From IMG/VR virus record IMGVR_UViG_3300030616_000016, positions 1 through 64,000 of that record: a stretch of DNA of 64,000 nucleotides. One strand, given 5' to 3'. Of this stretch, positions 10,547 through 26,253 are shown piece after piece. How positions within the stretch are numbered: position 1 is the first letter of the stretch; every line of letters starts with the position of its first letter. Below the pieces are notes generated by a model. It searched no databases. It was not told where the DNA came from and worked only from the letters and a program-made list of their open reading frames with translations. Position numbers and translations under genes: made by a program.

Positions 10547-11322
10547 ACTATCTCCTTGATTTCTTTGTCTGTAGTCTCTAGCACGCCTATTCTCTCTTCT
10601 AATTCGCCTATGATTCTGTCATAGTCTTCTTTCTTCTCTCTGAAGTGGTTGTACCACCATTTATTCACAAGTCTTTTCTTATGGTATCCATCTCTAAGAA
10701 GCTTGAAATAGAGTCGATTCTTTCTATCTATGAAATATTGGCTATCGTTGCTCTCATGATGATATCCATGGAATATTATTATGTCTGACAAGGCTGGGCT
10801 CGTATTTGCTTCTATTGGTCCGCCATGTATACATCCACTAATCGTAATAGGAGCTTTTGTCCTAAACAATCTATTATAATTAAATTGCTTAAGCTTTCCA
10901 CCTTTCTTTTTATCAAATATTAATAACGTTCTATAGTAATCTTTATCATGCATTCTTGCATCATCTGGAACATACAGGAACTCACCTGTATCCAGCTGCA
11001 GATGATATTCCGACTCACAAATCCGCTGCTGATACTTCAAAAGACCATCAAATCCATGTGTATATATCCATCCCTCAGGAATACCAAAAACCCTACATCC
11101 ATTATTCTTTGCCAATTCTACTGTATTGTCCTGAGAGCAGTCGTCTAATATGATTATCTTATCTGTTATTCTTCTTGCTGAATCAATGAGCTTTTGCAGA
11201 AAATGCGCTTGGTTTGATGTATGACATACAACTGTAATATCGCCTATATCAATTCTTTCTGCCTTAATGTCATCTACAAGAGCGCGCATTTCACCATCAC
11301 TAAGTTTCCATATCTCACTCAT
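10543..11322 (-). CDS. Glycosyltransferase family 2
   Basis: IIILDDCSQDNT, LDTGE, RLFR motifs. Confidence 0.8.
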   Translation of the reverse strand: MSEIWKLSDGEMRALVDDIKAERIDIGDITVVCHTSNQAHFLQKLIDSARRITDKIIILDDCSQDNTVELAKNNGCRVFGIPEGWIYTHGFDGLLKYQQRICESEYHLQLDTGEFLYVPDDARMHDKDYYRTLLIFDKKKGGKLKQFNYNRLFRTKAPITISGCIHGGPIEANTSPALSDIIIFHGYHHESNDSQYFIDRKNRLYFKLLRDGYHKKRLVNKWWYNHFREKKEDYDRIIGELEERIGVLETTDKEIKEIV

Positions 11323-11337
11323 GAAGCTGTCTCCGTT

Positions 11338-11973
11338 CTATTCGTCATAGAACCCCTGATCAAATGTCCACTTGAACATTTCTCTTATTAATTCTTTAGT
11401 CTTATTAGTGTGCTTCCAGTTTTGATATTTATCTTTTGGTGTTTTATTAACTACCGGAATTGTTATAGAGTCGTCTATTGGCACGCCCAGCTCTTTCAAT
11501 TTAACAGGGAATTGATCCATATCTTCCATCTTTACTATGGTAAGATTATCTGGTATCTTACCATCTATATTAAAGTAATCCCAGAAGCTTAGAGCGGATC
11601 CGCCATTCTTATGTTTCATTTCATCCCTAAACCACTCCACAAACTCTCCAAACTCCCTATCATTAGCCGCAAATGATTGCCTATTCCTTCTTCTATGCTC
11701 ATTGTTTAAGTTGTGAAGCCTTCTCCAGAATCTCCAGAAAGAAGGTAGCAAGTCATAAGGATTACGTATGAGAGTAATAATCTTGTTTTCTTCTAGGTTA
11801 AATGTCGGAACCTGGATCTTTCTGCTGAGGGGTTCATGGTAATTTCTTAATACAACTCTTCCATGAGGTCTATGAAAGGAATCATCTTGTCTTTCTAGAT
11901 ATACTTTAATTGAAGTACCACCACATTTCATGCAGTGTAAGAAACCTACTTTGAACTTTGGACTGTATATCAT
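11338..11973 (-). CDS. Sulfotransferase family 2-like protein
   Basis: FLHCMKCGGTS, IRNPYD; start placed downstream of the promoter. Confidence 0.8.
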   Translation of the reverse strand: MIYSPKFKVGFLHCMKCGGTSIKVYLERQDDSFHRPHGRVVLRNYHEPLSRKIQVPTFNLEENKIITLIRNPYDLLPSFWRFWRRLHNLNNEHRRRNRQSFAANDREFGEFVEWFRDEMKHKNGGSALSFWDYFNIDGKIPDNLTIVKMEDMDQFPVKLKELGVPIDDSITIPVVNKTPKDKYQNWKHTNKTKELIREMFKWTFDQGFYDE

Positions 11974-12006
11974 AGTTAAATCTCTCTTGTGTTTTGTATA
12001 TATATA

Positions 12007-12034
12007 ATTATAACACAGACACAAGACGAGTCAA
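12007..12034 (-). promoter_or_regulatory. sigma70-like promoter TTGACT-N16-TATAAT
   Basis: Upstream of the glycan-modification operon. Confidence 0.7.
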
Positions 12035-12061
12035 TAACTTAATCATATACAAGAAACCCAC

Positions 12062-12103
12062 CACCCAAAAGCGGTTTATCCACAAACAAACCGCTTTTGG
12101 GTG
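12062..12103 (-). terminator. 16-bp perfect hairpin, probable terminator
   Basis: CACCCAAAAGCGGTTT-10 nt-AAACCGCTTTTGGGTG just after stop of 12122 gene. Confidence 0.6.
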
Positions 12104-12121
12104 TTACAAGCACAGGCACAG

Positions 12122-12460
12122 CTAGCGCAAATAGTTGTATCGTCTATCGAAAAGCGCAGCTACATCTGCGTGGGTATTAATATCTTTGATGTTACCTAGA
12201 TCTGCTTTCTGTTTCTTGTTCTTATCTATTTGACCATAAGCTTTTATGTTGAATATCTCGCCCGTACTATTTTCAATCATAAAGTATCCGGTTGACCCAC
12301 AATCCAGATAGGTATATTTTCTTTTCTCACGTATTACCCATGTATATGATTCTGTCAAGTTGCCCATGTCATCAAAAAATGCACCGTTTGTATAACCATT
12401 TTTTATAAGGTCGTCACGCTGCCACATGTTTAAATGATTAGCTATCTCTTCTACTGTCAT
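12122..12460 (-). CDS. Hypothetical phage protein
   Basis: SD AGGAG. Confidence 0.6.
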   Translation of the reverse strand: MTVEEIANHLNMWQRDDLIKNGYTNGAFFDDMGNLTESYTWVIREKRKYTYLDCGSTGYFMIENSTGEIFNIKAYGQIDKNKKQKADLGNIKDINTHADVAALFDRRYNYLR

Positions 12461-12562
12461 TTAGTTCTCCTTATATTGCCTTACAGTAGTGTTCCTGGTG
12501 CAAATACACCGCCAACAGCGCCGCGTCTATGACACTTCTCACATGGATGTGTAAGGTGATGT

Positions 12563-12769
12563 TTACAGCACATCTTTCCTACAGAATGTTATTGTAGCTT
12601 TTGGTGCATATATCCCATGCATACCTTTATGATATGTATAAGCACAGCCCGGCGTTTCTTCTGGCTTCTTATATATCCAGTTTCTTCCGCAGTGACAACA
12701 CACATAAATAATTTCTTGTGGGGTTTCTTGTAGTATATGATCGCAATGATCGCAATCTTTATTGCTCAT
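12563..12769 (-). CDS. Small Cys/His-rich hypothetical protein
   Basis: SD AGGAA; CDHCDH and CCHCG. Confidence 0.5.
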   Translation of the reverse strand: MSNKDCDHCDHILQETPQEIIYVCCHCGRNWIYKKPEETPGCAYTYHKGMHGIYAPKATITFCRKDVL

Positions 12770-12783
12770 TGTTAATTCCTTTC

Positions 12784-13260
12784 CTATTCTGCTTCAAGAT
12801 CAAACTTACACCATGGACACTTTCCGTTCTCTGGTCGCATAAACGTGAATAGACTTTTGCATTTTGGACAGCTTTCATAATCTGATGCTTGTGTTTTATC
12901 AAGCAACGCCTCTCTTATGACATCCCAATTAACATAAGGTTTACCACCAGTACGTGGGTTTTCCTTTAATGGACAGCCAAACGCCGCATCATCAATATAC
13001 AGAGGACAATACATCTTCCGACTTTGATTCCAATCTATCTGTTGCGGGTTTTCGTTTATCCCGTGCAGAAAAATCCCCTTTTCGCAAAACCAATTTACTG
13101 CGTCCTCAAGGGTCTGACCTGAGCGTACAGTCCATAAATAAATCCAATTATCTTCCTTTACTAAGTCTTTAAGAGTTTCAACTGCTCCAGGTACATCTTC
13201 ACCTATATCTGGGAAACAATGGTCAACACATGTTCCATCAAAATCTACAGCGATATTCAT
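12784..13260 (-). CDS. HAD-superfamily hydrolase with C-terminal Zn ribbon
   Basis: VDFDGT and YIDD motifs; SD AGGAG before ATG at 13260. Confidence 0.75.
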   Translation of the reverse strand: MNIAVDFDGTCVDHCFPDIGEDVPGAVETLKDLVKEDNWIYLWTVRSGQTLEDAVNWFCEKGIFLHGINENPQQIDWNQSRKMYCPLYIDDAAFGCPLKENPRTGGKPYVNWDVIREALLDKTQASDYESCPKCKSLFTFMRPENGKCPWCKFDLEAE

Positions 13261-13261
13261 A

Positions 13262-13717
13262 TTATTTAACTCCTGTACTCCCAAATCCGCCCTCACCTCT
13301 TTCAGTATCACTCAGCTCTTTGGCTTCGATAAACTGAGCTATTTCTACTTTGGATAAAACAGCCTGCGCTATTCTATCGCCTTTGGATATTTTGAAGTAT
13401 TCATCACCATGATTGATAAGGATAACGCCAATTGTATTTCTGTAATCAGAGTCAATAGTACCTGGAGAGTTAAGCACAGTTACATGATTTTTGTATGCAA
13501 GCCCGCTTCGAGGACGTATTTGTAGTTCATAACCTTGTGGTATTTCTACAATTACGTTGGTATTAATGAGTGCTGTTTCGCGTGGATTCAATATATAATC
13601 TTCAGCCGCGCATAAATCAGCACCAGCAGAACCAGGCGTTTTATACTCAGGTACCTTGCCATCTTCTTTGACAATAGTTTTAACGATTACAGTCTTGATT
13701 GTGTCATGTCCGTCCAT
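13262..13717 (-). CDS. dut: dUTPase
   Basis: AGADL, RPRSG, GTIDSDYR, RIAQ, RGEGGFGSTG. Confidence 0.97.
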   Translation of the reverse strand: MDGHDTIKTVIVKTIVKEDGKVPEYKTPGSAGADLCAAEDYILNPRETALINTNVIVEIPQGYELQIRPRSGLAYKNHVTVLNSPGTIDSDYRNTIGVILINHGDEYFKISKGDRIAQAVLSKVEIAQFIEAKELSDTERGEGGFGSTGVK

Positions 13718-13758
13718 ACTCTTGGCTCCTTACCTAGTTCATATATAAATTATTTATA

Positions 13759-14415
13759 CTACGCTACATCGTAGCTGATTGTTACAAATCTTGGTGCAAA
13801 CTCACGACTGCCTATTATTTCATCATACAAAACAAAATCCATCTCGCTTATATTTGTTGCATTATGTATGGAATATTTACATTCATTATATCCTAGAATA
13901 CTCATTGTTTCAATCATATTATTTTTAGCATCCTGATGTGAATCACATAAGCCGCCGAATACTTCTTCAGAAGGAGAAAATTGCTTTCTTCCTAATGATA
14001 TATCGAATATAGGATCCATTAAAGCGTTCATAAATAGTTCTGCATGATTTTCATCTGATGTTATAATTACAGAAAATGCGGCGCCTATTAATACACTCTT
14101 AGTAATAATAATTGTATTGTTTGGCGTCCCGTTCTGATTCATTCTATCAGTATAATTTTTATATCCATTAGTGAGTGTGTTTCGTTGGTCTTCTATATGT
14201 CCTTCACTAAACACATAGGTATCCATACTGATACTGTTATTAACTTCAAGAATTTTGTCGGTATCTTCTCTTTCTATTCCAAGTGATGCACATAGCATCC
14301 CAACAACACCGCTTTTGGTTGGAAATCTGAGCGTCTTCTTAAACCTGTTTGGGCTTCTATCTCCCCATGACTGCTCTGGTCCAATTAAATTCATGATAAT
14401 ATATTTACTGTTCAT
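13759..14415 (-). CDS. cas5e: Type I-E Cas5e
   Basis: GPEQSWG, PTKSGVVGML, LGRK motifs. Confidence 0.9.
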   Translation of the reverse strand: MNSKYIIMNLIGPEQSWGDRSPNRFKKTLRFPTKSGVVGMLCASLGIEREDTDKILEVNNSISMDTYVFSEGHIEDQRNTLTNGYKNYTDRMNQNGTPNNTIIITKSVLIGAAFSVIITSDENHAELFMNALMDPIFDISLGRKQFSPSEEVFGGLCDSHQDAKNNMIETMSILGYNECKYSIHNATNISEMDFVLYDEIIGSREFAPRFVTISYDVA

Positions 14416-14439
14416 AGCTTCTCCAATTATATGTTAACA

Positions 14440-14894
14440 ACTTATTCCCCACGCATGTGGGGCAAACGTGCAAGCAGGGACTGACGCCCCTCGGAATTGA
14501 GATTCATCCCCACGCATGTGGGGTACACTGTTCTTGGTGTAACTCTTTTAAAGGCATCTGCGATTCATCCCCACGCATGTGGGGCAAACATTCCGTATAT
14601 TTCTGCTTCACGGCTTAACATGGATTCATCCCCACGTATGTGGGGCAAACGCATCCTCGCACTGCCGGTAAAGATACGCCAGCGATTCATCCCCACGCAT
14701 GTGGGGCAAACATTTGTTTGATGCCATGCTCTCGTGCAAGGCGCGATTCATCCCCACGCATGTGGGGCAAACAATGGGTTTCGGCGGCGGTCATGGCATT
14801 TTCTCGATTCATCCCCACGCATGTGGGGCAAACAATGGGTTTCGGCGGCGGTCATGGCATTTTCTCGATTCATCCCCACGCATGTGGGGCAAAC
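14440..14894 (-). CRISPR. Type I-E CRISPR array 1: 8 repeats (terminal one degenerate), 7 spacers
   Basis: 28-bp repeat GTTTGCCCCACATGCGTGGGGATGAATC (minus strand), 61-bp period. Confidence 0.97.
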
Positions 14895-14941
14895 ACCTAC
14901 ATCTTGTAGATGTAGGTGTTGGTTTTGCTACATATTGTATA

Positions 14942-16081
14942 CTAGATTCCCTCTAATATACCTGCTACCGCTGCATCAATTTTAGTATCACCTTTCATAC
15001 CAGTTGTACACTCGAACTTAGGATTGATACAAAACTTTTCTTTAGCTTCGTTCCACTTGTCAGATACTCTTTTGATAGATTCTTCCAAGCAGTTTTTACC
15101 CAGTTCAACAGGGGTTAAGAACTGATCACCGAACGTTTTTGGATAGCCGTTCTTTCTGATCATAAGAATATATGCAGGATAAGTTGATGCAAAGTAAGAT
15201 GTGCTCATTCCTGATGGAGCGGCCATGATTGAACAGACAAGCGCGCATTTAAGTACACCTCTGAACTCTTCATCGTCAAGAACACCGCCAATATTATTCT
15301 CACTTCTGAGCTGATCAAGATTGATAGACTTGAACATATAATAGCAACCGGTATTTGTTTCTTGATAATCCATATGAGCTGCGCCGGCATCATCTTTCTC
15401 ATGCATTTCTTCAGCAGCAATGAACGCATTGATACTTGGAACAGTTCTATGGGTTGTGAATGCAGAGGAGCTTTTTACAGCAGACTCTATATTATCTCTG
15501 CCGGCAATCATTCTTCCAAACAAATAGATATCTGACATATCCTTACATATAGTATCAGTAGCTTGAGTGATTGCTTTTATCGCTTCACTTCTCTTATCAG
15601 GATCAGTCTTGTATGTCAGCTTTTTGTATTTTTCTTTAGTAAATTCTTGAGAAGTTTTGATATCACATGCTTGGACCTTGCCTATATCCTCTTTGTGAGC
15701 TCTTAGAATATCAGCAATGTTTGCCATTTCCTGATTTGAAACAAATACAATAGTAGACAACTTATTAATATCATCTTTATGTGATCCTTTAATGCCATCA
15801 GTACAAATACGCTGAAAGTATGGCATTTCTTCTTCTGGAACCACGTCTGCTATCGCCTTAGCAACTTCTCTGGTGATGTATTTAGTACGATTGCCGCCGA
15901 AGTATTCCGGCATCTCTTCCTTACATACGGTTCTCCAAGCTCTCTTCAATGCTTGAGAAGAAATCATTCCTCTAAGCGAGTCATTAATGTTGACGCTCTT
16001 AGGTGTTCCATCCATGTCTCTATTCATACAGTGAATAGGAAATTCCTGAATTGTGTGTATCTCGATGTGATCCATTTCCAA
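14942..16081 (-). CDS. cas7: Type I-E Cas7 (Cse4)
   Basis: MNRDMDGTPK, ISSQALKRAWR, LFGRM, AFTTH. Confidence 0.92.
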   Translation of the reverse strand: MEMDHIEIHTIQEFPIHCMNRDMDGTPKSVNINDSLRGMISSQALKRAWRTVCKEEMPEYFGGNRTKYITREVAKAIADVVPEEEMPYFQRICTDGIKGSHKDDINKLSTIVFVSNQEMANIADILRAHKEDIGKVQACDIKTSQEFTKEKYKKLTYKTDPDKRSEAIKAITQATDTICKDMSDIYLFGRMIAGRDNIESAVKSSSAFTTHRTVPSINAFIAAEEMHEKDDAGAAHMDYQETNTGCYYMFKSINLDQLRSENNIGGVLDDEEFRGVLKCALVCSIMAAPSGMSTSYFASTYPAYILMIRKNGYPKTFGDQFLTPVELGKNCLEESIKRVSDKWNEAKEKFCINPKFECTTGMKGDTKIDAAVAGILEGI

Positions 16082-16091
16082 CTCCTAATAG

Positions 16092-16667
16092 TTACTTTAT
16101 TGCTTTAAGTGTGATCATTCCATAACCAAATGATTTATATGGCCCAATGCCATTTCTAAATACATTGATAAGACTCTCTCTATCTTTTACTTCCAATACA
16201 CCTACAAATACAGCAGTGCTTATGATGCCGTTCTCGACTTCATTCTTCATGAATACAGAATCAGTATTCTTTGTAATGCTGGTAATTGTAACTTCTTGTG
16301 GCTTAAGCTTCCTGAGTATCCAATCTTTTTTATCTTCTTCTTTGATTATAGGAATTCTGGTAGGTTTGCCATCGTTGTATTTTTTGATGCATGGCGCGGC
16401 TTCAACATTAAACAAATACTTTGACCAATTAAACATCTTTTCTGGTATGCTTATGGTCTCAACATTGAAGTCATCAATCTTAGAGGGAGTTATATCCGAC
16501 AATATGATAAACATATGTCCTTCTCTTTCCTCAGTATATTTGAATAAAAACTGCCTACTATCCAATTGACTGAAAGCTTTCCATATAAACTGATGTCTAT
16601 GATATGGATCATTTAGACAATTCATATAGAAGTTTTCATCATCTAATATTAATCTTGATGCATACAT
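16092..16667 (-). CDS. cas6e: Type I-E Cas6e (Cse3)
   Basis: MYASRL, DPYHRHQ, GIGPYKSFGYG Gly-rich loop. Confidence 0.92.
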   Translation of the reverse strand: MYASRLILDDENFYMNCLNDPYHRHQFIWKAFSQLDSRQFLFKYTEEREGHMFIILSDITPSKIDDFNVETISIPEKMFNWSKYLFNVEAAPCIKKYNDGKPTRIPIIKEEDKKDWILRKLKPQEVTITSITKNTDSVFMKNEVENGIISTAVFVGVLEVKDRESLINVFRNGIGPYKSFGYGMITLKAIK

Positions 16668-17204
16668 CTATTCATCACCTCCCATACACAACTGTTCTTC
16701 TGTGAGGAGGGAGTTTTTATTTCCCCAATATTGAATAGCCCAGTTTTCTCGTACTTGACAGTTCCATTCAAGAATGTTGTGACAAAGCTCATCAAGATCA
16801 TAATACAATGATTTGAAATCAATTGCAATATTCTTGTCTATCATATGCGTTACAGATCTTTTAATAAGTTCAAGCATAGATGACGTGGTATTTGTTTTCA
16901 TGATGCAGTGGAAAATCGTTTCTGTAGAGCTAGATGATCTATTTACAAGTAGTTTCATACACTTACCAAATTTATTTCTGCCACTGGTCTCAGCCTTTTG
17001 ATATAAATATGCAATTGTAGCAGCTACATCTACTCTAACTTTATCAGATAGATTAAATCCAGCTTCAATTAGAACTGGATATATTTTGCATCTAGTATTC
17101 CTATTAATCCCATATTTAATTAGGCCTCTTAATGCACCATCATACTTACTTCTTGCTACAATCTTCAGTAGCCTGTCTATAGGATATTCTTGTGTTTCTG
17201 ACAT
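16668..17204 (-). CDS. cse2: Type I-E small subunit Cse2/Cas11
   Basis: Operon position, size, IDF..L..DL and WA..YW motifs. Confidence 0.8.
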   Translation of the reverse strand: MSETQEYPIDRLLKIVARSKYDGALRGLIKYGINRNTRCKIYPVLIEAGFNLSDKVRVDVAATIAYLYQKAETSGRNKFGKCMKLLVNRSSSSTETIFHCIMKTNTTSSMLELIKRSVTHMIDKNIAIDFKSLYYDLDELCHNILEWNCQVRENWAIQYWGNKNSLLTEEQLCMGGDE

Positions 17205-17216
17205 TATGTATTTCTC

Positions 17217-18731
17217 CTAGGATTGTATAAACTTGTCTCTTAAATTAACAATATCTCTGTTTAGACTATTCTTAGCTTGAACATAAGCACGAATGTCTCT
17301 AGCTGATGACTTTCCACAGATACTATCAAATATTTGCAAAGCAGTGCGGATAACTGGAGATACCCACTTTATCTTCAGGTTTTCTATAGCATTTTCACTA
17401 TTGTCCTCAATAAGCTCTATTAGTATCTTATATTTATTATCCATCTTTGACCAAAACTCTGTCAAAGGATTATATCCCTGACTAGTATCTCTATTAGACT
17501 TAATCCTTTTAAAATATAAATTTATTTTCTCTAATAAAATACGTCCGATTTCATCCATGAATTTACAACTCTTAATATACTTATCAATAGATGATCTTTC
17601 TCTGATGTTCTTTGGCATTACCCCAATCCACTCATCTATATCAAATAGCTTTGTTTTTCTGTTCATGAAATTTGCTTGTACAGACCAAAGGACTATATAA
17701 GGACTACTAATTTCATTGGCCATTTCTCGTAATTGTCTGATATGTAGATTGGTTTTTGCTTGATCATCATATGTATTAATTACGGCTCCTAGATCTTTCC
17801 ATGCATAACTTCCTTTACGTAATGCAAAGTAGCGCTCTTCGCCCTTATAGTTTTTGCGCACTACAGTTTCAGGCTCTTTAACTAATATATTCCCATTAAC
17901 TTGTTTACGTAATTCAGGACAAATTGTTGTTCCGCTAACGAACCTTTTTGTTTCTCTGTCAATCTTTAATATACATGACCAGCTACACATTCTACCAAGA
18001 TATGTTTTATAAGCGTTTTTAGCAAATTCTTCGTCATTGACAGAACTAGGTTGCGTTTCCCACACTGGTTTACCCCATGATTCTTCTGGATTTGAGTAGC
18101 CAAGAAATGGTAGATTTTCTTTAAATATCATATTCATATGAATAGTTTCTTTAAGTGTATTACCAATAAGCTTAGTCATATTTCTATCGGTTCCAACACC
18201 TCTTACCTGGTAGTTGCCAAGTTTTTCTCCCCATGTGATTGGCTGTGCTGTGCCACCAGATGTAAACGTATGGAATGTAATAAGATTTTTGGCTATATTT
18301 GCGTCGCTAATATCTTCTGGTTTATAAGGCCTTGAATTAATACAATCATCAGATCTTGATGCGGTTTGTGATTGTATATTTAACTGAGATACGCATATGC
18401 CCTTTTCCCAGTCTGTGTTTTCTATTGATGGCACCTGCATAAAAGCCCGGTCTCCATATAGGTCAAACAGGTCTACTTTATTATTAATATATTCAATAGC
18501 AGAATCTTTAAACGTATCTTTAATTCTGGTCCACTCTTCCATGTTATCGGGGCCATCAATAGCTGCTTGGGATATACAAACCAACATTCTAATTAATGAC
18601 ATTCTAACAATAGCAGACTCATTGATAAACATAATATTATCTAAGTTCTGGAATAGATCTTTAAGTCCATATGTAGTGAATCGGTTATCTTGAAGCCTAA
18701 CTCGGATCCATGCATCATTTACTAAGTTCAT
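17217..18731 (-). CDS. cas8e: Type I-E large subunit Cas8e (Cse1)
   Basis: MNLVNDAWI, FDLY...AFMQ, GNTLKETI, PVWE. Confidence 0.88.
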   Translation of the reverse strand: MNLVNDAWIRVRLQDNRFTTYGLKDLFQNLDNIMFINESAIVRMSLIRMLVCISQAAIDGPDNMEEWTRIKDTFKDSAIEYINNKVDLFDLYGDRAFMQVPSIENTDWEKGICVSQLNIQSQTASRSDDCINSRPYKPEDISDANIAKNLITFHTFTSGGTAQPITWGEKLGNYQVRGVGTDRNMTKLIGNTLKETIHMNMIFKENLPFLGYSNPEESWGKPVWETQPSSVNDEEFAKNAYKTYLGRMCSWSCILKIDRETKRFVSGTTICPELRKQVNGNILVKEPETVVRKNYKGEERYFALRKGSYAWKDLGAVINTYDDQAKTNLHIRQLREMANEISSPYIVLWSVQANFMNRKTKLFDIDEWIGVMPKNIRERSSIDKYIKSCKFMDEIGRILLEKINLYFKRIKSNRDTSQGYNPLTEFWSKMDNKYKILIELIEDNSENAIENLKIKWVSPVIRTALQIFDSICGKSSARDIRAYVQAKNSLNRDIVNLRDKFIQS

Positions 18732-21250
18732 TCATCTTCTCCTAGTTTATATTTTTCTAGGCCAATAACATCATTATATTTGTAGCCTATATATTTACCA
18801 TAGAATGAGATTCTGCCGTCAAAACCAATTTTAAGGATTGGTGTTCTAGTGTTAAAGTACTTTTGCAGAAATTCTTCTGTTCTCAAATCGAACTTGTCAA
18901 ATACATATGATGGAAGTGATACAAGATTTCTATGTATTTGTATATCTGTCTCCCTATCCTTTAATCCTGGTATAATGGTAACTTCTATGTCATTAGATAG
19001 AGTAATGGTATTGTGCTTCTTATAATTGGATTGTTTGATAAGCAAACAACCAATCTTTCTTATGTTGCTGTGACGAGTTTCGACTTCTGCATCATCATAG
19101 AGTTCATTATAATTTTCATTTGTGATTGTGGCAGCTAGATTTTCTAGACTGTCCTTCTTTATCATATCTTTCTCAAACAGTTCCTGTATGTTCTTGTTCT
19201 TATGTTCTGTCTCTTTATATACAGCCTCTAAAAGAGTTTTTACATCTTCTGGTGTGTTAATCACTTCTGTATTCTTAATTACTTCATATGTTCTAAAAAG
19301 AATATATGTGGAATAGACGAAGTGATCATTAAATCCAAATATTTTGCTAAGATCAGATTCTTTACATAGCTTATCTATATTATCATGCATGATGAGCACT
19401 TCAGGACATACAGCTATTCTTTCTCGTATGTGTCTCCATAGCCTACCAAGTCTTTGGATTAGCATATCTATTGGACATAGTTTTGTAATGAGAAAATCAA
19501 AGTCGATGTCAACACTTTGTTCTAGTACTTGTGTAGATACAAGGATACATCCTTCAGCGTCTCCATCTTTACCTAAGGCATCTAACCACTCCTTTTCTAT
19601 CTCTATTCTTTTCCACTCTGGATAGTTAGAATGCAAGATGCCTATCTTAATATCATCACTGGTTTTTGATTTAATGAGTTTGTATAGATGCTGACACTCT
19701 TTTACTGTGTTCATTATGCATCCTACTCTTTGACCTGCTCTAGCTCTATTAATGGCTATTTCTGCAGATTTGCAATAGTCCGTTTCTTGCATTGTAACTT
19801 TTATATTTTTGTTTACTCCCTGACTACGTACCTTAATGTTCTTAATCTTAGTGCTTTGCTTAATAGTAATAAGGGGATAATCGTGCTTATTTATATCATC
19901 AGATTCTAGAATTTGAGTGCGCATTTTATTTGTCAGTGTAGCAGATAGAATGATAACTGTGCAATCAATCTTGGATAGTAAATTTATGAGCCTGTGAATA
20001 AGTGTGTTGGTAAACACATCGTATGAATGGATCTCATCTAGAATTACAACCTTTCCAGCCAGTCCGGCTTTTCTCAATGTATTATATCTAACAGGTAGAA
20101 CACCAAGTAAAGATTGATCTATTGTACCAACAGCAAACTGACTAAGCAAAGCATAGTTTTTATAATCAAACCAGTTTTTACCTTCTATCTTAATAGAGCT
20201 ATCTGATACAGGGCTTTGTATATTATTCTCATACATCCATGCCTTACCATGAGCTAATTTTACGTAGTCTTTATTATTAGATATAGTTTTTATGAAAGGC
20301 TGAATTCTTTCATAGATCTTATTACTTGTGGTTCTCGTGGGTAATGCGAAATATATCCCGCTGGCTTCTTTCCTATCAAGCAATTTATATGCTGCATAAA
20401 GAGCCGCTTCAGTTTTGCCTAATCCAGTAGGCGCTTCTACAATGGAAATAGCATTTTTAGTTATATTATTTGACAGTTCATATTGAACGTCATAAGGTGA
20501 ATAACCAAAAATGTCTTTAAAGGATAGATTGGGCAAAATATCCAGCTGTTTCCATCCGCATAGCTGTAATGCTTTGCTTGCATCATTATTATTTATATCT
20601 TCGAATAAGCTATTGTTAGATGCTATATGATCTGATATAGATACAAATCCTGTAATGGTATCTATTATATCTATATCTATTATCTCAGACAGCGCTCTCT
20701 TTTCATCTGCAGTTAGATCAGCTAACTGATGTTCTATAAATAGCTTTCGTTGTTCTGACCACGTACTTGATCCATATCTTTCACTTTCATCATTGTCTGC
20801 TATATCATACTTAGTAGCTCCATGATGCTTATATGCAATAATGCTCAGAATGTTGGCAATAGATGCCTCAGCATATGTTCGTAAAGATGTGTTACCTATT
20901 TTAGCATGGTTATCTTCGAATGACATTCCAAATAGTTTACATAGATACATAAAGATAGGATCATTTCTTAATTCTTCTTGTGCCTCAGCTGGTAGATTGT
21001 TAAACATCTTTTTATCAAACCCTGGACTTATTTTACCAGTATCATGTGTTCTGGATCCGCATATAACTGGTAAACTATATTTATCAATCATAAAATCAGG
21101 CATGATATTGATAAGTTCTCTTGCAACATCTTCTACCTTTTTAGAATGTTGCAACACTGTCTCGCCAAAACCACCATCTTTTGTTTTTGCTGGACAGTCG
21201 AGCCATGGTATAGCAGGAATATCCACGACATTAGATTCTATTCTTGGCAT
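18728..21250 (-). CDS. cas3: Cas3 HD nuclease-helicase
   Basis: HDTGK, HHG, SDH, APTGLGKT, DEIH, SAT, QRLGRLWRH. Confidence 0.95.
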   Translation of the reverse strand: MPRIESNVVDIPAIPWLDCPAKTKDGGFGETVLQHSKKVEDVARELINIMPDFMIDKYSLPVICGSRTHDTGKISPGFDKKMFNNLPAEAQEELRNDPIFMYLCKLFGMSFEDNHAKIGNTSLRTYAEASIANILSIIAYKHHGATKYDIADNDESERYGSSTWSEQRKLFIEHQLADLTADEKRALSEIIDIDIIDTITGFVSISDHIASNNSLFEDINNNDASKALQLCGWKQLDILPNLSFKDIFGYSPYDVQYELSNNITKNAISIVEAPTGLGKTEAALYAAYKLLDRKEASGIYFALPTRTTSNKIYERIQPFIKTISNNKDYVKLAHGKAWMYENNIQSPVSDSSIKIEGKNWFDYKNYALLSQFAVGTIDQSLLGVLPVRYNTLRKAGLAGKVVILDEIHSYDVFTNTLIHRLINLLSKIDCTVIILSATLTNKMRTQILESDDINKHDYPLITIKQSTKIKNIKVRSQGVNKNIKVTMQETDYCKSAEIAINRARAGQRVGCIMNTVKECQHLYKLIKSKTSDDIKIGILHSNYPEWKRIEIEKEWLDALGKDGDAEGCILVSTQVLEQSVDIDFDFLITKLCPIDMLIQRLGRLWRHIRERIAVCPEVLIMHDNIDKLCKESDLSKIFGFNDHFVYSTYILFRTYEVIKNTEVINTPEDVKTLLEAVYKETEHKNKNIQELFEKDMIKKDSLENLAATITNENYNELYDDAEVETRHSNIRKIGCLLIKQSNYKKHNTITLSNDIEVTIIPGLKDRETDIQIHRNLVSLPSYVFDKFDLRTEEFLQKYFNTRTPILKIGFDGRISFYGKYIGYKYNDVIGLEKYKLGEDE

Positions 21251-21269
21251 TAGTCATAATCCTATTATA

Positions 21270-21968
21270 AATAAATCCCCACGTATGTGGGGCAAACAAT
21301 ATTCCTGAGTACAAATTCAGAAAAGATTTCGATTCATCCCCACTTATGTGGGGCAAACTTTGGGGTGGGTTAAAGTGTTGCGACGCTGATCGATTCATCC
21401 CCACGCGTGTGGGGTACACATGTTGACATGATCCGGCAGGACGGCACGCTGAGATTCATCCCCACGCGTGTGGGGTACACATGCAAAGCAAGAAGATGGT
21501 GCAGTCGAGGAGCGATTCATCCCCACGCGTGTGGGGTACACATGATATGCCATGGATTATCCCTGATTACCCTCGATTCATCCCCACGCACGTGGGGTAC
21601 ACTTCAGAGTCGCTATTGGATTTGAACCTGACACCGATTCATCCCCACGCACGTGGGGTACACGCATAACGGGAGATCGGACGCGAAGCGTAGAGCGATT
21701 CATCCCCACGCACGTGGGGTACACCAGTTTTTTGCCAATCAGGATGGAGCAGTTTGCGATTCATCCCCACGCACGTGGGGTACACATAACAAGGCAGCAG
21801 GCCATCAATGCCCAGTGCGATTCATCCCCACGCGTGTGGGGTACACATGTTGACATGATCCGGCAGGACGGCACGCTGAGATTCATCCCCACGCGTGTGG
21901 GGTACACATGATATCGCTTTTGCGAAGCTTCCAGTCCGGAGATTCATCCCCACGCGTGTGGGGTACAC
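21270..21968 (-). CRISPR. Type I-E CRISPR array 2: 12 repeats, 11 spacers
   Basis: Repeat GTGTACCCCACRYGCGTGGGGATGAATC (minus strand), 61-bp period. Confidence 0.97.
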
Positions 21969-22253
21969 GCCAAGATTTGGTGCCATGTGAATACATCAAC
22001 CACAATGTATTGTGGTTAAATCATGCTAAGAGGTTAACGGATTGTCTTATGTTTAGAACAATTTGGACTTGCTTATAAATGCCGCCATATTGTCAACATA
22101 AGTCTCAATCATTTCAAGCTCAGCCAAGGACATAGCTATAAGCTTGTCCTTGGTGATCTTTTTGATAATCGATTCCGCGATTTCTTCTTTCTTTACTTCT
22201 TCAGGTGTACTTGCTGAATCCATATTATATACCTAGAATAATTGTTGGTTGTA

Positions 22254-22505
22254 TTAAAAGCGCTTTTTAGCAATTCTGTCTTCGATATCAAGGAACAGTC
22301 TTTTGGTTACTTGGAATCCGCATACATAGTATGTGAAATCCGTAGGAATGAACTCTTCCCTAATTGGCTGGCCACATAGAACACAGTTCTCAGTAATAAT
22401 CTCTATTTGACGCCTATGATTTAAGCTTATAGGCAAATCGCTATCAATAAGGCTATAAATATCGAACGGCAAACTTGACATAGTTGAATAAACTTTCTCT
22501 TGCAT
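22254..22505 (-). CDS. Hypothetical protein
   Basis: SD AAGGAG. Confidence 0.5.
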   Translation of the reverse strand: MQEKVYSTMSSLPFDIYSLIDSDLPISLNHRRQIEIITENCVLCGQPIREEFIPTDFTYYVCGFQVTKRLFLDIEDRIAKKRF

Positions 22506-22558
22506 ATTCTAACTCCTTACAATAAGTGTTGTGATAAATAGTACGATCAAAACAGTAC

Positions 22559-22892
22559 GACTTTTCCCCACACATTGTGGGGCTAACTTACTCTGGGCAA
22601 TAATTCATAGTCCAGTTAGTGATTCATCCCCACATACGTGGGGTAAACGGAGGAGACCTGGATGGCGATATGTGTATGTTAGATTCATCCCCACGCATGT
22701 GGGGAAAACGCAATTTGTTTACGCTCGCCATCTTTATAAGCAGATTCATCCCCACATACGTGGGGCAAACTTGACGAAGAAAGATCCGTCAATTCAAACG
22801 CTCGATTCATCCCCACGCACGTGGGGTAAACGATTTTGCTCTTTGTGTCGCCTGCTCAACAAAAGATTCATCCCCACATACGTGGGGTACAC
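22559..22892 (-). CRISPR. Type I-E CRISPR array 3: 6 variable repeats, 5 spacers
   Basis: Same repeat family, 61-bp period. Confidence 0.95.
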
Positions 22893-22913
22893 CTACATAT
22901 TGTATAATAAAAA

Positions 22914-22966
22914 TACCCCTGACAGGAGTCGAACCTGCACGCCCGAAGGCACTAGATTCTAAGTCT
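22914..22966 (-). pseudogene. 3' half of an interrupted tRNA-Leu(TAG)
   Basis: AGACTTAGAATCTAG, variable arm, T arm, then CAGGGGTA; no adjoining 5' half. Confidence 0.85.
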
Positions 22967-23363
22967 TACGGCTAAGTTGTAATCTTCTACACCATTTACC
23001 GACGCACGATTTACCGCAGAATGGACCGTTCATTTTATCTTTCTGTCTGCGGCGTTCATCCTTTGCCATTACCTTTTTTGTATTACCACATTCAACGCAT
23101 ACTATGGTTGTCCATTCTATCTGCTTGCGATGATGATTTATATGTTCCGCTTTTGATTTAATTTCTAAGTTATATATACTATTATTCTGTTTGTTTCCAT
23201 CCTTGTGATGTACAAGTTCAGATGAGTCCAATTTTCTTCCAAGACTCTTCTCCATAACTTCTCGGTGCATCAACACAGTTGCTTTGCTGTCATCGCTGTA
23301 TTTTACTGTACACGCAAGATATCCTTCTAGGTTGAACCAATTAGATCGGTAAACTTCTTTCAT
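22959..23363 (-). CDS. HNH homing endonuclease
   Basis: MHR..., VHHKDGNKQNN..NL; SD GGAG before ATG 23363. Confidence 0.88.
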   Translation of the reverse strand: MKEVYRSNWFNLEGYLACTVKYSDDSKATVLMHREVMEKSLGRKLDSSELVHHKDGNKQNNSIYNLEIKSKAEHINHHRKQIEWTTIVCVECGNTKKVMAKDERRRQKDKMNGPFCGKSCVGKWCRRLQLSRKT

Positions 23364-23384
23364 CTTGATCTCCAAATATAATAA

Positions 23385-23466
23385 TGGGAGTAGAGGGACT
23401 CGAACCCTCACGCCTTGCGGCAACGGTTTCTAAGACCGTCCTGTCTGCCATTTCCAGCATACTCCC
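23385..23466 (-). tRNA. tRNA-Leu(TAG)
   Basis: ACGGT-CTTAGAA-ACCGT, long variable arm. Confidence 0.9.
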
Positions 23467-23468
23467 AA

Positions 23469-23496
23469 AGTATAATATATATCCTAAGAAAGTCAA
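23469..23496 (-). promoter_or_regulatory. sigma70-like promoter TTGACT-N16-TATACT
   Basis: Inside the inserted tRNA-HNH cassette, very close to the tRNA 5' end. Confidence 0.5.
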
Positions 23497-23509
23497 GTAA
23501 AGTGTTTGC

Positions 23510-23545
23510 CTAATCTAGCGTGTATGCCAGTTTCACCACAGGGGC
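23510..23545 (-). pseudogene. 5' half of the interrupted tRNA-Leu(TAG)
   Basis: GCCCCTG-TG-D arm-CTAGATTAG; acceptor strand pairs with the 22914 half. Confidence 0.85.
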
Positions 23546-23552
23546 ATAATAA

Positions 23553-23639
23553 TGGTAGCCAGGGAGGGAGTCGAACCCACACACCGCAATGGATATCCGG
23601 GCTTAAACCGGATGCGTCTGCCAGTTCCGCCACCTGGCC
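23553..23639 (-). tRNA. tRNA-Leu(TAA)
   Basis: TCCGG-TTTAAGC-CCGGA, CCA end. Confidence 0.9.
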
Positions 23640-23641
23640 AT

Positions 23642-24145
23642 TTATTCTTGATGTTTATGCTTCATCTTTTCTAGTGCAGTTTGTATGATATGATTAATTT
23701 CTACTTCAGATCCACAGAATGGACAGTTCGTTTTATCATGAATACTGCGAATAAAAATGCTTTGTGTTGGTATTTCATCTCTATCTACTTCTCTAAAGCT
23801 GTCATGTTCTAGTATAATAATAATTGCTTTATCACTGTAGTCTACTTCAATGCTCATGATTCGAGACTCGTTAATCTTTACATCTGGATAGTCTTCTATC
23901 ATATAGCAATAGCAGCTATTGTCCATCATACGAAGCAAGGATATAAAATCACAATCAACTTGTATAAATTTACCTGTTTGTGGTAATATAACATTTCTAT
24001 TCATAGTCGAATAAGGTATCCATCCAGATTCACTAGTAGAAGTAGTAGTATGGGTGCTATTATAAGTAAGACCATTCACGAGATTTACTAGTGAATCCAT
24101 ATTAAAACTATTGCTGGTTGAATCATCCGTTGACATGTATCTCAC
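23642..24145 (-). CDS. Hypothetical protein with C-terminal CPFCG
   Basis: ORF; resembles 6740..7048. Confidence 0.55.
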   Translation of the reverse strand: MRYMSTDDSTSNSFNMDSLVNLVNGLTYNSTHTTTSTSESGWIPYSTMNRNVILPQTGKFIQVDCDFISLLRMMDNSCYCYMIEDYPDVKINESRIMSIEVDYSDKAIIIILEHDSFREVDRDEIPTQSIFIRSIHDKTNCPFCGSEVEINHIIQTALEKMKHKHQE

Positions 24146-24425
24146 TCCATATTAAAAAGAATAAACCAGTTGCGGCGTGTGAAAGATGGCTTAGGCCTGA
24201 TTCTTCATCTAGTTTCTCACCCTTACGATATGCTAAAAGATGACGCAAAACGGCGGCATAATATCTATCATTCATGTTTTCTACATGCTTCCAGTTATCG
24301 TCGTCGTATTTCTTTGCGCCGAATGTAAGTACCTTTCCTACTTCTTCTATACATTCAGGTGGAATAAGATCCATGCGGATTTTATCGCCGTCAAACTTCA
24401 TACCATTAGTATCTGACATTCTCAT
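24123..24425 (-). CDS. dATP/dGTP diphosphohydrolase-like (DUF5664)
   Basis: KFDGDK.RMDLIP, GAKKY..NW, RH, D.ESGLSHL.HA. Confidence 0.8.
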   Translation of the reverse strand: MRMSDTNGMKFDGDKIRMDLIPPECIEEVGKVLTFGAKKYDDDNWKHVENMNDRYYAAVLRHLLAYRKGEKLDEESGLSHLSHAATGLFFLIWSEIHVNG

Positions 24426-24479
24426 TCTCCTATTGCTTACAATACACGCGCCAGCGAGGGCGCGATTCTAAATATTAAA

Positions 24480-24551
24480 AGCATGCGACTGGATTTGAAC
24501 CAGCGTATATGGAATTTGCAATCCCACGCCTAACCACTTGGCTACGCATGC
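24480..24551 (-). tRNA. tRNA-Cys(GCA)
   Basis: TGGGA-TTGCAAA-TTCCA. Confidence 0.9.
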
Positions 24552-24774
24552 ATTATAAATAAACTTCAAAGCCGTTGTCTTGATCAGACATTACTTTGCT
24601 CCCATAAGATATATTACTGATAGATTGAGAGTACCGGCGGCAAACCAGTATAATGAACAGCCCCAGTTTTTGTAATAAAGATATACAAAGCTGGCCACAA
24701 ATGATTCAATCATTATCAGCGTAGGTAGTATTCTAGATATTATACTCTCCATGAAGTTACCTTTCAAGTTAAAA

Positions 24775-24816
24775 ATGGAAGGTTGACTGTAGCTCTACCG
24801 ACTGAGCTACCCAAGC
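24775..24816 (-). pseudogene. Truncated tRNA 5' half
   Basis: GCTTGGG-TA-GCTCAGTCGGTAGAGC with no anticodon or T arm. Confidence 0.65.
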
Positions 24817-24826
24817 ATAAAAATCA

Positions 24827-25023
24827 CCTGATATATAGATACATTTTTCGAAGGAAATATCTCCTGGTGCAGGCGCCTTCCGGATTAAGATCACTCCTCT
24901 ACCGCCCATATGTATTTCTAGGTGTTGAGGGGGATCGGTATCCGGAAGGCGGTTATCATTTATGCGATGAATACACCGCACTATTCTTTTTACATTCAAA
25001 AGAATAAAACTCTATATACCAGG
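24827..25023 (-). ncRNA. Unknown structured RNA family, copy 1
   Basis: Closing stem, long hairpin with loop GAAAUACAUAU (24908-24918), 7-bp tetraloop hairpin. Confidence 0.75.
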
Positions 25024-25030
25024 CTTATTT

Positions 25031-25105
25031 TGGAGCGCCATGTGGGAATCAAACCCACTCCTTCAGGTTGGAGGCCTGACATGCGATCATTAACACCTAT
25101 GGCGC
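25031..25105 (-). tRNA. tRNA-Gly(TCC)
   Basis: TCAGG-CCTCCAA-CCTGA, CCA. Confidence 0.85.
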
Positions 25106-25114
25106 GTTATATTA

Positions 25115-25393
25115 TTACAATTCAATTGAACATGTTATTGCATCCACACGCATTATCATACTAGACAATCTATTGTTGCATACCCTAATATTATCTGCTA
25201 AAGGAACCAATTCTTGTTCTTTTTCTGCATTTATTGTGTCTGTATTTTTGGTACTAAGAATTGGTATAAGACGATCTTGTAATGCACTTAGTTTTCCATT
25301 TAGTAGATCAATATTTTGTTCTAATGACTCTATTTGTGTATAAACTTGGGGGTTCTTTTGCTGGTACTGCTTTTTTATCAGCCTCGCTATCAT
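25115..25393 (-). CDS. Coiled-coil hypothetical protein
   Basis: ORF between tRNAs. Confidence 0.5.
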   Translation of the reverse strand: MIARLIKKQYQQKNPQVYTQIESLEQNIDLLNGKLSALQDRLIPILSTKNTDTINAEKEQELVPLADNIRVCNNRLSSMIMRVDAITCSIEL

Positions 25394-25473
25394 ATCTTTC
25401 TGCCATTGTTATTTTCCTTAAAAAGGGTTTAAGTATAAAAAGCCCGTGCTGCCACGGATTATAAATTAAATAG

Positions 25474-25545: not shown

Positions 25546-25554
25546 TTTGTTTAT

Positions 25555-25630: not shown

Positions 25631-25631
25631 T

Positions 25632-26234: not shown

Positions 26235-26253
26235 CTCCTAATTGTGGTATAAA

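What the first reader, a model, noticed from the sequence alone, without database searches (positions are those of the whole stretch)
13759..22892. Phage-encoded type I-E CRISPR-Cas without cas1/cas2, with arrays interleaved in the operon
Seen: a full Cascade plus a Cas3 with intact-looking HD and helicase motifs, and three arrays (8, 12 and 6 repeats); one lies between cas7 and cas5e and one directly upstream of cas3. Established: huge phages can carry adaptation-less CRISPR systems. Inference: Cas6e processing of the embedded arrays would also cut the cas mRNA, giving autoregulation or stoichiometry control, and spacers may be acquired through host Cas1-Cas2.
Basis: partly seen in the sequence, partly recalled or inferred. 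Interest (0 to 1): 0.62.

Follow-up and report, generated by a model that had tools for sequence, protein, structure and literature searches.

The report
Phage type I-E CRISPR-Cas, arrays inside operon
A roughly 232 kb marine-sediment phage carries an intact-looking type I-E CRISPR-Cas interference machine with no spacer-acquisition genes and with its CRISPR arrays placed between the cas genes, a known kind of system in an unusual layout that also appears in at least two other huge phages.

Summary
On the minus strand of 13759-22906 the order is: array C (6 repeats), two small ORFs, array B (12 repeats), cas3, cas8e, cse2, cas6e, cas7, array A (8 repeats), cas5e.

- **System type.** Repeats are 29 nt and spacers 32 nt. 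Cas3 HD and helicase motifs and the Cas6e catalytic His are present.
- **Phage origin.** The record is a 231,647 bp viral contig, about 95% complete, with terminase, DNA polymerase, tail fibre and 22 tRNAs.
- **No adaptation genes.** Pfam models, custom HMMs and tblastn found no Cas1 or Cas2 anywhere in the record.
- **Lineage.** The proteins are very divergent: Cas7 is at most 33% identical to anything searched. They group with an I-E lineage that shares the order cas6e-cas7-cas5e and includes bacterial loci.
- **Co-transcription.** Arrays and genes point the same way. Only 18 nt (array B to cas3) and 23 nt (array A to cas5e) separate the last repeat from the next start codon. Co-transcription and Cas6e cutting of the shared RNA are therefore likely, but no RNA data exist.
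- **Not supported.** Autoregulation and spacer uptake through host Cas1-Cas2 remain untested. No protospacer or host was found, and duplicated spacers point to recombination.
- **Precedent.** Two other huge-phage I-E loci without Cas1 (L203, L207) and Corynebacterium diphtheriae I-E-a also have arrays between cas genes.

This is a new variant of a known kind.

The parts
22558..22892 (-). CRISPR array C: 5 clean 29-nt repeats plus a degenerate 30-nt sixth repeat (22558-22587); 5 spacers of 32 nt
22893..22906 (-). 14-nt motif TATACAATATGTAG abutting the first repeat of array C; a leader stub or possible -10 element
   Evidence: the exact motif occurs only twice in 231,647 bp, both times upstream of an array
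22254..22505 (-). 83-aa ORF between arrays C and B; no family, possibly a zinc ribbon
22053..22223 (-). 56-aa acidic ORF between arrays C and B; no family
21269..21968 (-). CRISPR array B: 12 repeats, 11 spacers (B2 = B9). The last repeat is degenerate; its hairpin plus a U-rich tail looks like a terminator. It ends 18 nt before the cas3 ATG
18728..21250 (-). cas3 (840 aa), HD nuclease fused to an SF2 helicase, motifs intact
17217..18731 (-). cas8e/cse1 (504 aa)
   Evidence: PF09481, E 1.8e-41
16668..17204 (-). cse2/cas11 small subunit (178 aa)
   Evidence: PF09485, 36.7 bits against a cut-off of 24.6; weak in NCBIfam
16092..16667 (-). cas6e (191 aa), placed before cas7 (non-canonical); catalytic His25 and the glycine-rich loop are kept
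14942..16081 (-). cas7/casC (379 aa), very divergent
14928..14941 (-). second copy of the 14-nt motif TATACAATATGTAG, directly after the cas7 stop codon
14892..14920 (-). 13-bp hairpin between cas7 and array A, overlapping the first 3 nt of repeat 1
   Evidence: z = -4.5; 0 of 200 shuffles fold as well
14439..14894 (-). CRISPR array A: 8 repeats, 7 spacers (A1 = A2), embedded between cas7 and cas5e; 47 nt after the cas7 stop and 23 nt before the cas5e ATG
13759..14415 (-). cas5e (218 aa), last gene of the module, preceded by a GGAG ribosome-binding site
   Evidence: TIGR01868, 95.9 bits against a cut-off of 68.95

Best explanation
This is an adaptation-less but otherwise complete type I-E CRISPR-Cas interference module, resident in a roughly 232 kb marine-sediment phage.

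It belongs to a distinct I-E lineage whose effector genes run cas3-cas8e-cse2-cas6e-cas7-cas5e. Three co-oriented arrays, about 21 distinct spacers in total, sit upstream of cas3 (C and B) and between cas7 and cas5e (A).

Most likely mechanism (inferred, not shown): the block is transcribed in one direction as long RNAs that carry arrays and cas genes together. Cas6e cuts at the 3' base of each repeat hairpin. This releases 61-nt crRNAs with an 8-nt 5' handle (AUGAAUCG). It also splits the message into a cas3-to-cas7 segment that ends in a repeat hairpin, and a cas5e segment that keeps its ribosome-binding site. Cascade loaded with these crRNAs then recruits the intact Cas3 to degrade matching DNA from a competitor element or the host.

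The scattered arrays most likely arose by recombination and duplication of array units that carried a short leader stub. This is tolerated, and perhaps favoured, because a system without Cas1-Cas2 needs no full leader, only transcription.
For: - **Identity.** Family matches for all six genes. Catalytic and helicase motifs are present. The repeat hairpin covers positions 6-21 and leaves an 8-nt tail.
- **Phage.** DNA polymerase, large terminase and tail fibre. 22 tRNAs. The record is an IMG/VR virus record with a CheckV estimate of 95%. The same sequence occurs in two marine-sediment studies at about 99.8% identity, and an X1 contig bridges the cas5e/dut junction.
- **Resident, not a recent graft.** The cas genes are 34.6% GC against 38.1% for the genome. 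Cas7 is at most 33% identical to any representative of about 15 billion proteins.
- **Lineage.** The Cas7 tree places the phage with all loci of order cas6e-cas7-cas5e (L062, L122, L125, L131, L138), apart from canonical-order loci with 93/88 support.
- **No Cas1/Cas2**.
- **Co-transcription.** Same strand; trailer repeats degenerate on the downstream side. Gaps between cas genes are -4, 12, 0 and 10 nt. Gaps are 18 and 23 nt from an array to the next ATG. Promoter-like sites are no more frequent than in shuffled sequence.
- **Recombination.** Duplicated spacers and mixed repeat variants within arrays. The 14-nt motif is found only upstream of arrays A and C.
- **Recurrence.** L207 is a complete 437 kb phage with terminal repeats and no Cas1. 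It has arrays between cas7 and cas6e and between cas6e and cas5e, ending 12 and 32 nt before the next start. L203, from a 225 kb viral contig with no Cas1, has a 6-repeat array between cas3 and cas8e.
Against: - There is no RNA evidence at all.
- No protospacer was found. This covers the phage itself, reference phages for array B, IMG/VR for spacers A1 and B2, and all fetched loci. The target and the PAM are therefore unknown.
- The 14-nt motif contains TACAAT and could be an array-specific promoter.
- The last repeat of array B looks like an intrinsic terminator just before cas3.
- About 5% of the genome is unseen.
- The Cas7 branch is very long (3.3 changes per column) with a skewed composition, so its exact place in the tree is unsure.
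- The recurrence rests on a small, post-hoc sample: 3 of 5 viral loci without adaptation genes.
Confidence: 0.65

Rival explanations
1. The arrays are independent transcription units. The shared 14-nt motif upstream of arrays A and C is a promoter, and hairpins such as the last repeat of array B or the 13-bp stem before array A insulate them. Any Cas6e cutting of cas mRNA would then be incidental or absent.
For: The motif contains a TACAAT -10-like hexamer and occurs only at arrays A and C. The last repeat of array B followed by a U-rich tract scores as terminator-like. A strong 13-bp hairpin lies between cas7 and array A.
Against: Even with its own promoter, each array runs into the next gene: 18 and 23 nt remain, and there is no terminator-like site after array A. 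The 13-bp hairpin has no U-tract on the coding strand. Array B has no such motif. Promoter-like sites are at the chance level.
Confidence: 0.2
2. The locus is a decaying or non-functional relic of a captured bacterial I-E system, and the scattered arrays and shuffled gene order are the debris of rearrangement.
For: Loss of cas1/cas2. Duplicated spacers and degenerate terminal repeats. Extreme divergence. No targets found.
Against: All six ORFs are full length with tight operon spacing. Catalytic residues of Cas3 and Cas6e are kept. 24 of the 26 repeat hairpin stems are intact. The gene order is shared with bacterial relatives, some of which have cas1-cas2, so it is ancestral to a lineage and not debris. 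The composition matches the phage.
Confidence: 0.1
3. The embedded arrays act as regulatory cr-like RNAs, like the mini-arrays or CreR/CreTA elements found in about 19% of I-E loci. They would repress cas or phage promoters through partial complementarity.
For: Mini-arrays in intergenic regions of I-E operons are common and can autoregulate (PMC10120712). Terminal spacer B11 is AT-rich like the phage genome.
Against: These arrays have 6 to 12 repeats with full 32-nt spacers and a mean GC of 48%, unlike the phage. The best self-matches are 12 to 16 nt, at the chance level, and lie outside the locus. Multi-repeat cases were rare in that survey, with only 12 intergenic mini-arrays of three or more repeats; larger arrays were excluded by the method.
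Confidence: 0.05

Closest known systems
Canonical type I-E CRISPR-Cas (E. coli K-12, Thermobifida fusca)
   Same: The same six effector families: Cas3 with HD and helicase domains, Cas8e, Cse2, Cas7, Cas5e and Cas6e. 29-nt repeats with a hairpin at positions 6-21 and 32-nt spacers. The Cas6e catalytic His aligns with E. coli H20.
   Different: No cas1-cas2. The gene order is cas6e-cas7-cas5e instead of cas7-cas5e-cas6e. Arrays lie upstream of cas3 and inside the operon rather than after cas2. Protein identity is only 22-33%. The system is carried by a phage.
Adaptation-less CRISPR-Cas of huge phages (Al-Shayeb et al. 2020, PMC7162821; later surveys PMC12676247 and PMC12826114)
   Same: A huge phage genome, compact arrays, no Cas1/Cas2, and interference nuclease motifs kept. 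Subtype I-E has been reported in pig-gut jumbo phages. About 84% of phage systems lack the acquisition proteins Cas1, Cas2 and Cas4.
   Different: I found no text in those papers that describes multi-spacer arrays placed between effector genes. This locus comes from marine sediment and is a very divergent I-E lineage.
Corynebacterium diphtheriae type I-E-a and C. striatum I-E' (Sangal 2013, as cited in PMC12231136 and PMC9944170)
   Same: A type I-E operon with a CRISPR array between cas genes (cas3 and cse1), or with a rearranged gene order.
   Different: These are bacterial chromosomes. The array sits between cas3 and cse1, not between cas7 and cas5e. C. striatum I-E' carries a cas1 gene; I did not check this for C. 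diphtheriae I-E-a.
Huge-phage I-E loci found here: L207 (IMG/VR 3300021978_000001, 437 kb, terminal repeats) and L203 (IMG/VR 3300035698_018317, 225 kb)
   Same: No Cas1 in either record. Co-oriented multi-repeat arrays lie between I-E cas genes, and the last repeat in L207 ends 12-32 nt before the next start codon. Short conserved leader stubs recur before the L207 arrays.
   Different: The phages are unrelated (59% and 38% GC, with no homology outside the cas genes). Gene orders differ: L207 runs cas3-cas7-cas6e-cas5e-cas8e::cse2 fusion, and L203 is canonical. Repeat sequences also differ.
Vibrio phage ICP1 type I-F system
   Same: A phage-encoded type I system with arrays flanking the cas genes, used against a host defence element (PMC11656645).
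   Different: ICP1 is I-F, has Cas1 and a Cas2-3 fusion, and acquires spacers itself. Its targets are known.
Regulatory mini-arrays in I-E loci (Shmakov et al. 2023, PMC10120712)
   Same: Repeat units inside the cas operon, most often next to cas3.
   Different: Mini-arrays have two repeats and a spacer that partly matches a cas promoter. Here there are 6 to 12 repeats, and no self-match was found.

Membership tests
Type I-E CRISPR-Cas | Cas8e (Cse1) large subunit | tested here: met
   PF09481, E 1.8e-41, 143 bits against a cut-off of 24.7. It falls below the NCBIfam equivalog cut-off (62 against 70), so it is divergent.
Type I-E CRISPR-Cas | Cse2 (Cas11) small subunit | tested here: met
   PF09485, 36.7 bits against a cut-off of 24.6. 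NCBIfam gives only 17.5 bits against 28.5.
Type I-E CRISPR-Cas | Cas7 (CasC), Cas5e and Cas6e of the I-E families | tested here: met
   PF09344, E 5.6e-57. TIGR01868, 95.9 bits (cut-off 68.95). TIGR01907, 106.3 bits (cut-off 45.2). Cas6e His25 aligns with E. coli CasE His20.
Type I-E CRISPR-Cas | Single-chain Cas3 with an HD nuclease and an SF2 helicase | tested here: met
   Cas3_HD, DEAD and Cas3 C-terminal domains. Helicase motifs I, II, III and VI align with PDB 4q2c and 4qqw. HD residues were read from the translation.
Type I-E CRISPR-Cas | 29-nt hairpin repeats with 32-nt spacers | tested here: met
   61-nt period in all three arrays. A 6-bp stem with a tetraloop at positions 6-21.
Type I-E CRISPR-Cas | Adaptation module (I-E type cas1 and cas2) | tested here: not met
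   No hit in the 231,647 bp record with PF01867, PF09707 or PF09827, with custom Cas1/Cas2 HMMs run without filters, or with tblastn. The record is about 95% complete.
Type I-E CRISPR-Cas | Canonical order cas3-cas8e-cse2-cas7-cas5e-cas6e with the array after the operon | tested here: not met
   The order here is cas3-cas8e-cse2-cas6e-cas7-[array A]-cas5e, with two arrays upstream of cas3. The gene order, though not the embedded array, is shared with L062, L122, L125, L131 and L138.
Phage-encoded adaptation-less CRISPR-Cas (huge phages) | Encoded in a phage genome | tested here: met
   DNA polymerase phrog_405, large terminase phrog_2 and tail fibre. 22 tRNAs. An IMG/VR record with a CheckV estimate of 95%. 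The cas5e/dut junction is bridged by an independent X1 contig.
Phage-encoded adaptation-less CRISPR-Cas (huge phages) | Arrays and an effector present but Cas1/Cas2 absent | tested here: met
   Cas4 was not searched.
Regulatory mini-array / CreR-like element | A two-repeat unit whose spacer partly matches a promoter within the locus, next to a PAM | tested here: not met
   The arrays have 6, 8 and 12 repeats. The best self-matches of any spacer are 12 to 16 nt, at the chance level, and none lies in 12-24 kb except a 12-nt tRNA-loop match of spacer B6.

The most novel reading that the evidence does not exclude
Placing multi-spacer arrays between cas genes may be a selected expression design of adaptation-less type I-E systems in huge phages. 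One phage transcript would be cut by Cas6e into crRNAs and separate cas mRNA segments. That would tie guide and effector production to a single promoter and cap the upstream mRNA segments with Cas6e-bound hairpins. The design would have arisen independently in at least three unrelated huge-phage lineages: this phage, L207 and L203.
Probability: 0.25. Interest if true: 0.65.

Novelty: new variant of a known kind. Interest (0 to 1): 0.5.

Why it matters
Phage-borne CRISPR-Cas systems without acquisition genes are known, and so is type I-E in jumbo phages.

What is new is the layout. Full multi-spacer arrays sit inside the effector operon, 12 to 32 nt from the next start codon, in at least two unrelated huge phages (this one and L207). 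A third, L203, has an array between cas3 and cas8e with a gap of about 140 nt. The host lineage of I-E here also has a non-canonical gene order and very divergent proteins.

If the arrays and genes share a transcript, Cas6e would act as an mRNA-processing enzyme for its own operon. That is directly testable by expressing the cloned 9 kb locus with and without the catalytic His.

The locus is also a compact, Cas3-competent I-E module from an AT-rich phage background. It could show what minimal leader an array needs once adaptation is lost.

Tried and rejected
**Close relatives of the locus**
- None in the reference phage collection.
- None in IMG/VR using Cas7 alone.
- None among 110 metagenome loci that share the repeat core.

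**Spacer targets**
- No self-targets.
- No match for array B in reference phages.
- No match for A1 or B2 in IMG/VR, even with every sixth base free.
- No match in any fetched locus.
- The plasmid collection and arrays A and C against reference phages were not searched.

**Host by repeat**
- A SAR324 MAG array is 28/29 identical to the array A repeat. I first took this as a host link.
- I downgraded it for three reasons. The repeat family is very common, and the L122 repeat is 27/29 identical to the phage's other repeat type. The SAR324 Cas proteins are only 22-30% identical to the phage's. No spacers match in either direction, including arrays from five further SAR324-phylum genomes.

**Spacer turnover from reads**
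- One call on 13500-19499, within the 6,000-letter limit, gave only fragmentary contigs at 3-5x depth.
- The loose ends inside array A in run X2 cannot be told apart from other arrays that share the repeat.

**Other checks**
- Rfam found no CRISPR repeat family and no tRNA at the tRNA-like fragment.
- The small ORFs between arrays C and B match nothing in Pfam, NCBIfam or PHROGs. The 83-aa ORF also has no informative Atlas match; the 56-aa ORF was searched in PHROGs only.
- The sigma-70 promoter scan was at the chance level.
- Structure and complex prediction were not used, because the family assignments were already clear.

Full report
**What is there**

All features lie on the minus strand of the window, read 5' to 3' in this order.
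- A 14-nt motif (22906-22893).
- Array C (22892-22558): five clean 29-nt repeats and a degenerate sixth.
- Two small ORFs of 83 and 56 aa with no family.
- Array B (21968-21269): 12 repeats.
- cas3 (21250-18728), cas8e (18731-17217), cse2 (17204-16668), cas6e (16667-16092), cas7 (16081-14942).
- A second copy of the 14-nt motif, then a 13-bp hairpin.
- Array A (14894-14439): 8 repeats.
- cas5e (14415-13759), followed by a dUTPase gene.

Repeats are 29 nt and spacers 32 nt. The repeat core occurs nowhere else in the genome.

**Is the machinery intact?**

All six proteins pass Pfam gathering scores for the I-E families. Cas5e and Cas6e also pass the NCBIfam equivalog cut-offs.
- Cas3 aligns with solved Cas3 structures through helicase motifs I, II, III and VI.
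- The HD residues, including the THDTGK motif, are present in the translation (read by eye).
- Cas6e keeps the His that aligns with catalytic His20 of E. coli CasE, and it keeps the C-terminal glycine-rich loop.
- Each repeat folds into a 6-bp GC stem with a tetraloop at positions 6-21. This leaves the 8-nt tail that would become the crRNA 5' handle. The cleavage geometry is taken from established knowledge of I-E.

**Is it a phage, and does it lack adaptation genes?**

The window is the first 64 kb of a 231,647 bp IMG/VR virus record, with a CheckV estimate of 95% and no terminal repeats.
- The record encodes a phage-type DNA polymerase, a large terminase and a tail fibre.
- It carries 22 tRNAs next to the locus.
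- The sequence is found in two marine-sediment studies at about 99.8% identity, and a contig from run X1 bridges the cas5e/dut junction.
- The cas genes are 34.6% GC against a genome mean of 38.1%, so this is not a recent graft or a chimera with GC-richer bacterial DNA.
- Cas1 and Cas2 are absent by Pfam models. They are also absent by custom HMMs built from six I-E Cas1 and Cas2 sequences, run without filters on every six-frame ORF, and by tblastn.
- The unseen 5% is the only loophole, and the usual place for cas1-cas2 is taken by a dUTPase gene.

**Where does it come from?**

The proteins are very divergent. An exhaustive search of representatives of about 15 billion proteins gives no Cas7 above 33% identity. 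The word-based search gives 29%.

The closest relative with known context is L062, a bacterial assembly. It has the same non-canonical order cas3-cas8e-cse2-cas6e-cas7-cas5e, with the array directly after cas5e.

Four metagenome loci share the cas6e-cas7-cas5e order. Two of them have cas1-cas2 after cas5e.

A Cas7 tree puts the phage, on a very long branch, with all variant-order loci and apart from canonical-order loci, with 93/88 support. The gene order is therefore a lineage trait. The embedded array is an addition, because cas7 and cas5e abut or overlap in the relatives.

**Do the arrays share transcripts with the genes?**

- The trailer-end repeats are the degenerate ones, and they lie downstream on the minus strand. 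The arrays therefore read in the same direction as the genes.
- Gaps between cas genes are -4, 12, 0 and 10 nt.
- Array A starts 47 nt after the cas7 stop and ends 23 nt before the cas5e ATG. Array B ends 18 nt before the cas3 ATG. Each downstream gene has a purine-rich ribosome-binding site.
- That leaves no room for a promoter between an array and the next gene. Promoter-like sites in the region are as frequent as in shuffled sequence.
- Co-transcription is the most economical reading. Predicted Cas6e cuts would fall outside coding sequence, so they would segment the message, not destroy it.

Three points cut the other way.
- The motif TATACAATATGTAG occurs exactly twice in the genome, both times upstream of an array, and it contains a -10-like hexamer.
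- The last repeat of array B plus its U-rich tail looks like a terminator.
- No RNA run holds this phage.

**Spacers, targets and host**

- The 24 spacers (about 21 distinct) average 48% GC against 38% for the phage. None matches the phage itself.
- No protospacer was found in the searches run.
- Spacers A1=A2 and B2=B9 are duplicated together with their flanking repeats, and repeat variants are mixed within arrays. This points to recombination, not stepwise acquisition.
- One SAR324 MAG has an array whose repeat is 28/29 identical to the array A repeat, next to a canonical I-E locus with cas1-cas2.
- That link is weak. The repeat family is widespread, and one variant-order locus (L122) is 27/29 identical to the phage's other repeat type. 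The SAR324 Cas proteins are only 22-30% identical. No spacers match in either direction, including five more genomes of that phylum.
- Host-assisted acquisition has a precedent in type IV-A3 plasmids (PMC11656645), but nothing here supports it.

**Is interleaving unique?**

No.
- Corynebacterium diphtheriae I-E-a has its array between cas3 and cse1.
- Two-repeat mini-arrays occur in about 19% of I-E loci, mostly next to cas3.
- A profile search of IMG/VR found nine viral I-E loci.
- Among these, L207 comes from a complete 437 kb phage with terminal repeats and no Cas1. It has at least seven arrays. One lies between cas7 and cas6e and one between cas6e and cas5e, ending 12 and 32 nt before the next start. 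Each is preceded by a short conserved stub.
- L203, from a 225 kb viral contig with no Cas1, has a 6-repeat array between cas3 and cas8e.
- These phages share nothing with the present one outside the cas genes.
- Two metagenome loci, L111 and L122, also show arrays between or immediately upstream of effector genes.
- In my small post-hoc sample, 3 of 5 adaptation-less viral I-E loci are interleaved, and none of the loci with cas1-cas2 is.

**Verdict**

The system is a phage-resident, adaptation-less, probably active type I-E module of a divergent variant-order lineage.

Autoregulation and host-assisted acquisition are unsupported.

The kind of system is known. The layout is a new variant, and it seems to recur in huge phages.

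Noticed in passing
window 23384-35625 (minus strand): A cluster of 21 tRNA genes found by ARAGORN lies directly upstream of the CRISPR-Cas block and is co-oriented with it. Rfam adds a 22nd tRNA at 25034-25105 that ARAGORN missed.
   Followed up: partly
window 22904-22943, and the ORF at 22959-23423: A fragment resembling a tRNA 3' half (T-arm and acceptor) abuts the array C motif, but neither ARAGORN nor Rfam calls it a tRNA. An HNH endonuclease ORF lies between it and tRNA-Leu (23384-23467). This may be a tRNA gene disrupted by a homing endonuclease, or a remnant of an insertion junction.
   Followed up: partly
window arrays A and B: Spacer A1 equals A2 and spacer B2 equals B9, each duplicated with its flanking repeats. 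Two repeat types (GTTTG... and GTGTA...) and several loop variants are mixed within and between arrays. This suggests recombination between arrays.
   Followed up: partly
window 21574-21634 (spacer B6): Spacer B6 contains a 12-nt stretch like a tRNA T-loop (GGTTCAAATCC). It matches several of the phage's own tRNA genes at the chance level. Its real target may be a tRNA-like sequence elsewhere.
   Followed up: no
L207 (IMG/VR 3300021978_000001, 437,490 bp, terminal repeats), locus 472-16425: This complete huge phage has at least seven I-E arrays and the shuffled gene order cas3-cas7-cas6e-cas5e. It also has a single 725-aa protein that matches both Cse1 and Cse2, apparently a fusion. The record has no Cas1.
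   Followed up: partly
L202 (IMG/VR 3300044557_000292, 419,707 bp, terminal repeats): This complete huge phage carries a canonical I-E locus that does include cas1 and cas2, with an array after them.
   Followed up: partly
L122 (Ga0315284_10068794, 4.8 kb): This short metagenome contig reads array, cse2, cas6e, cas7, cas5e, array. The upstream array ends 28 nt before cse2. Whether cas3 and cas8e lie beyond the contig end is unknown.
   Followed up: partly
window 14535 and 14706 in run X2: Contigs from the second sediment study match into array A and then continue with unrelated sequence. This could be a variant spacer set or another array that shares the repeat. Depth of 3-5x is too low to tell.
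   Followed up: no
window 12784-13717 and 24123-24425: The locus is flanked by nucleotide-metabolism genes: a dUTPase, a BT0820-type HAD phosphatase and a MazG-like pyrophosphohydrolase.
   Followed up: no
G002 (SAR324 MAG, 7.6 Mb): The MAG with the closest repeat has Cas1 matches on four different contigs and is unusually large. It may hold several CRISPR systems, or it may be a mixed bin.
   Followed up: no
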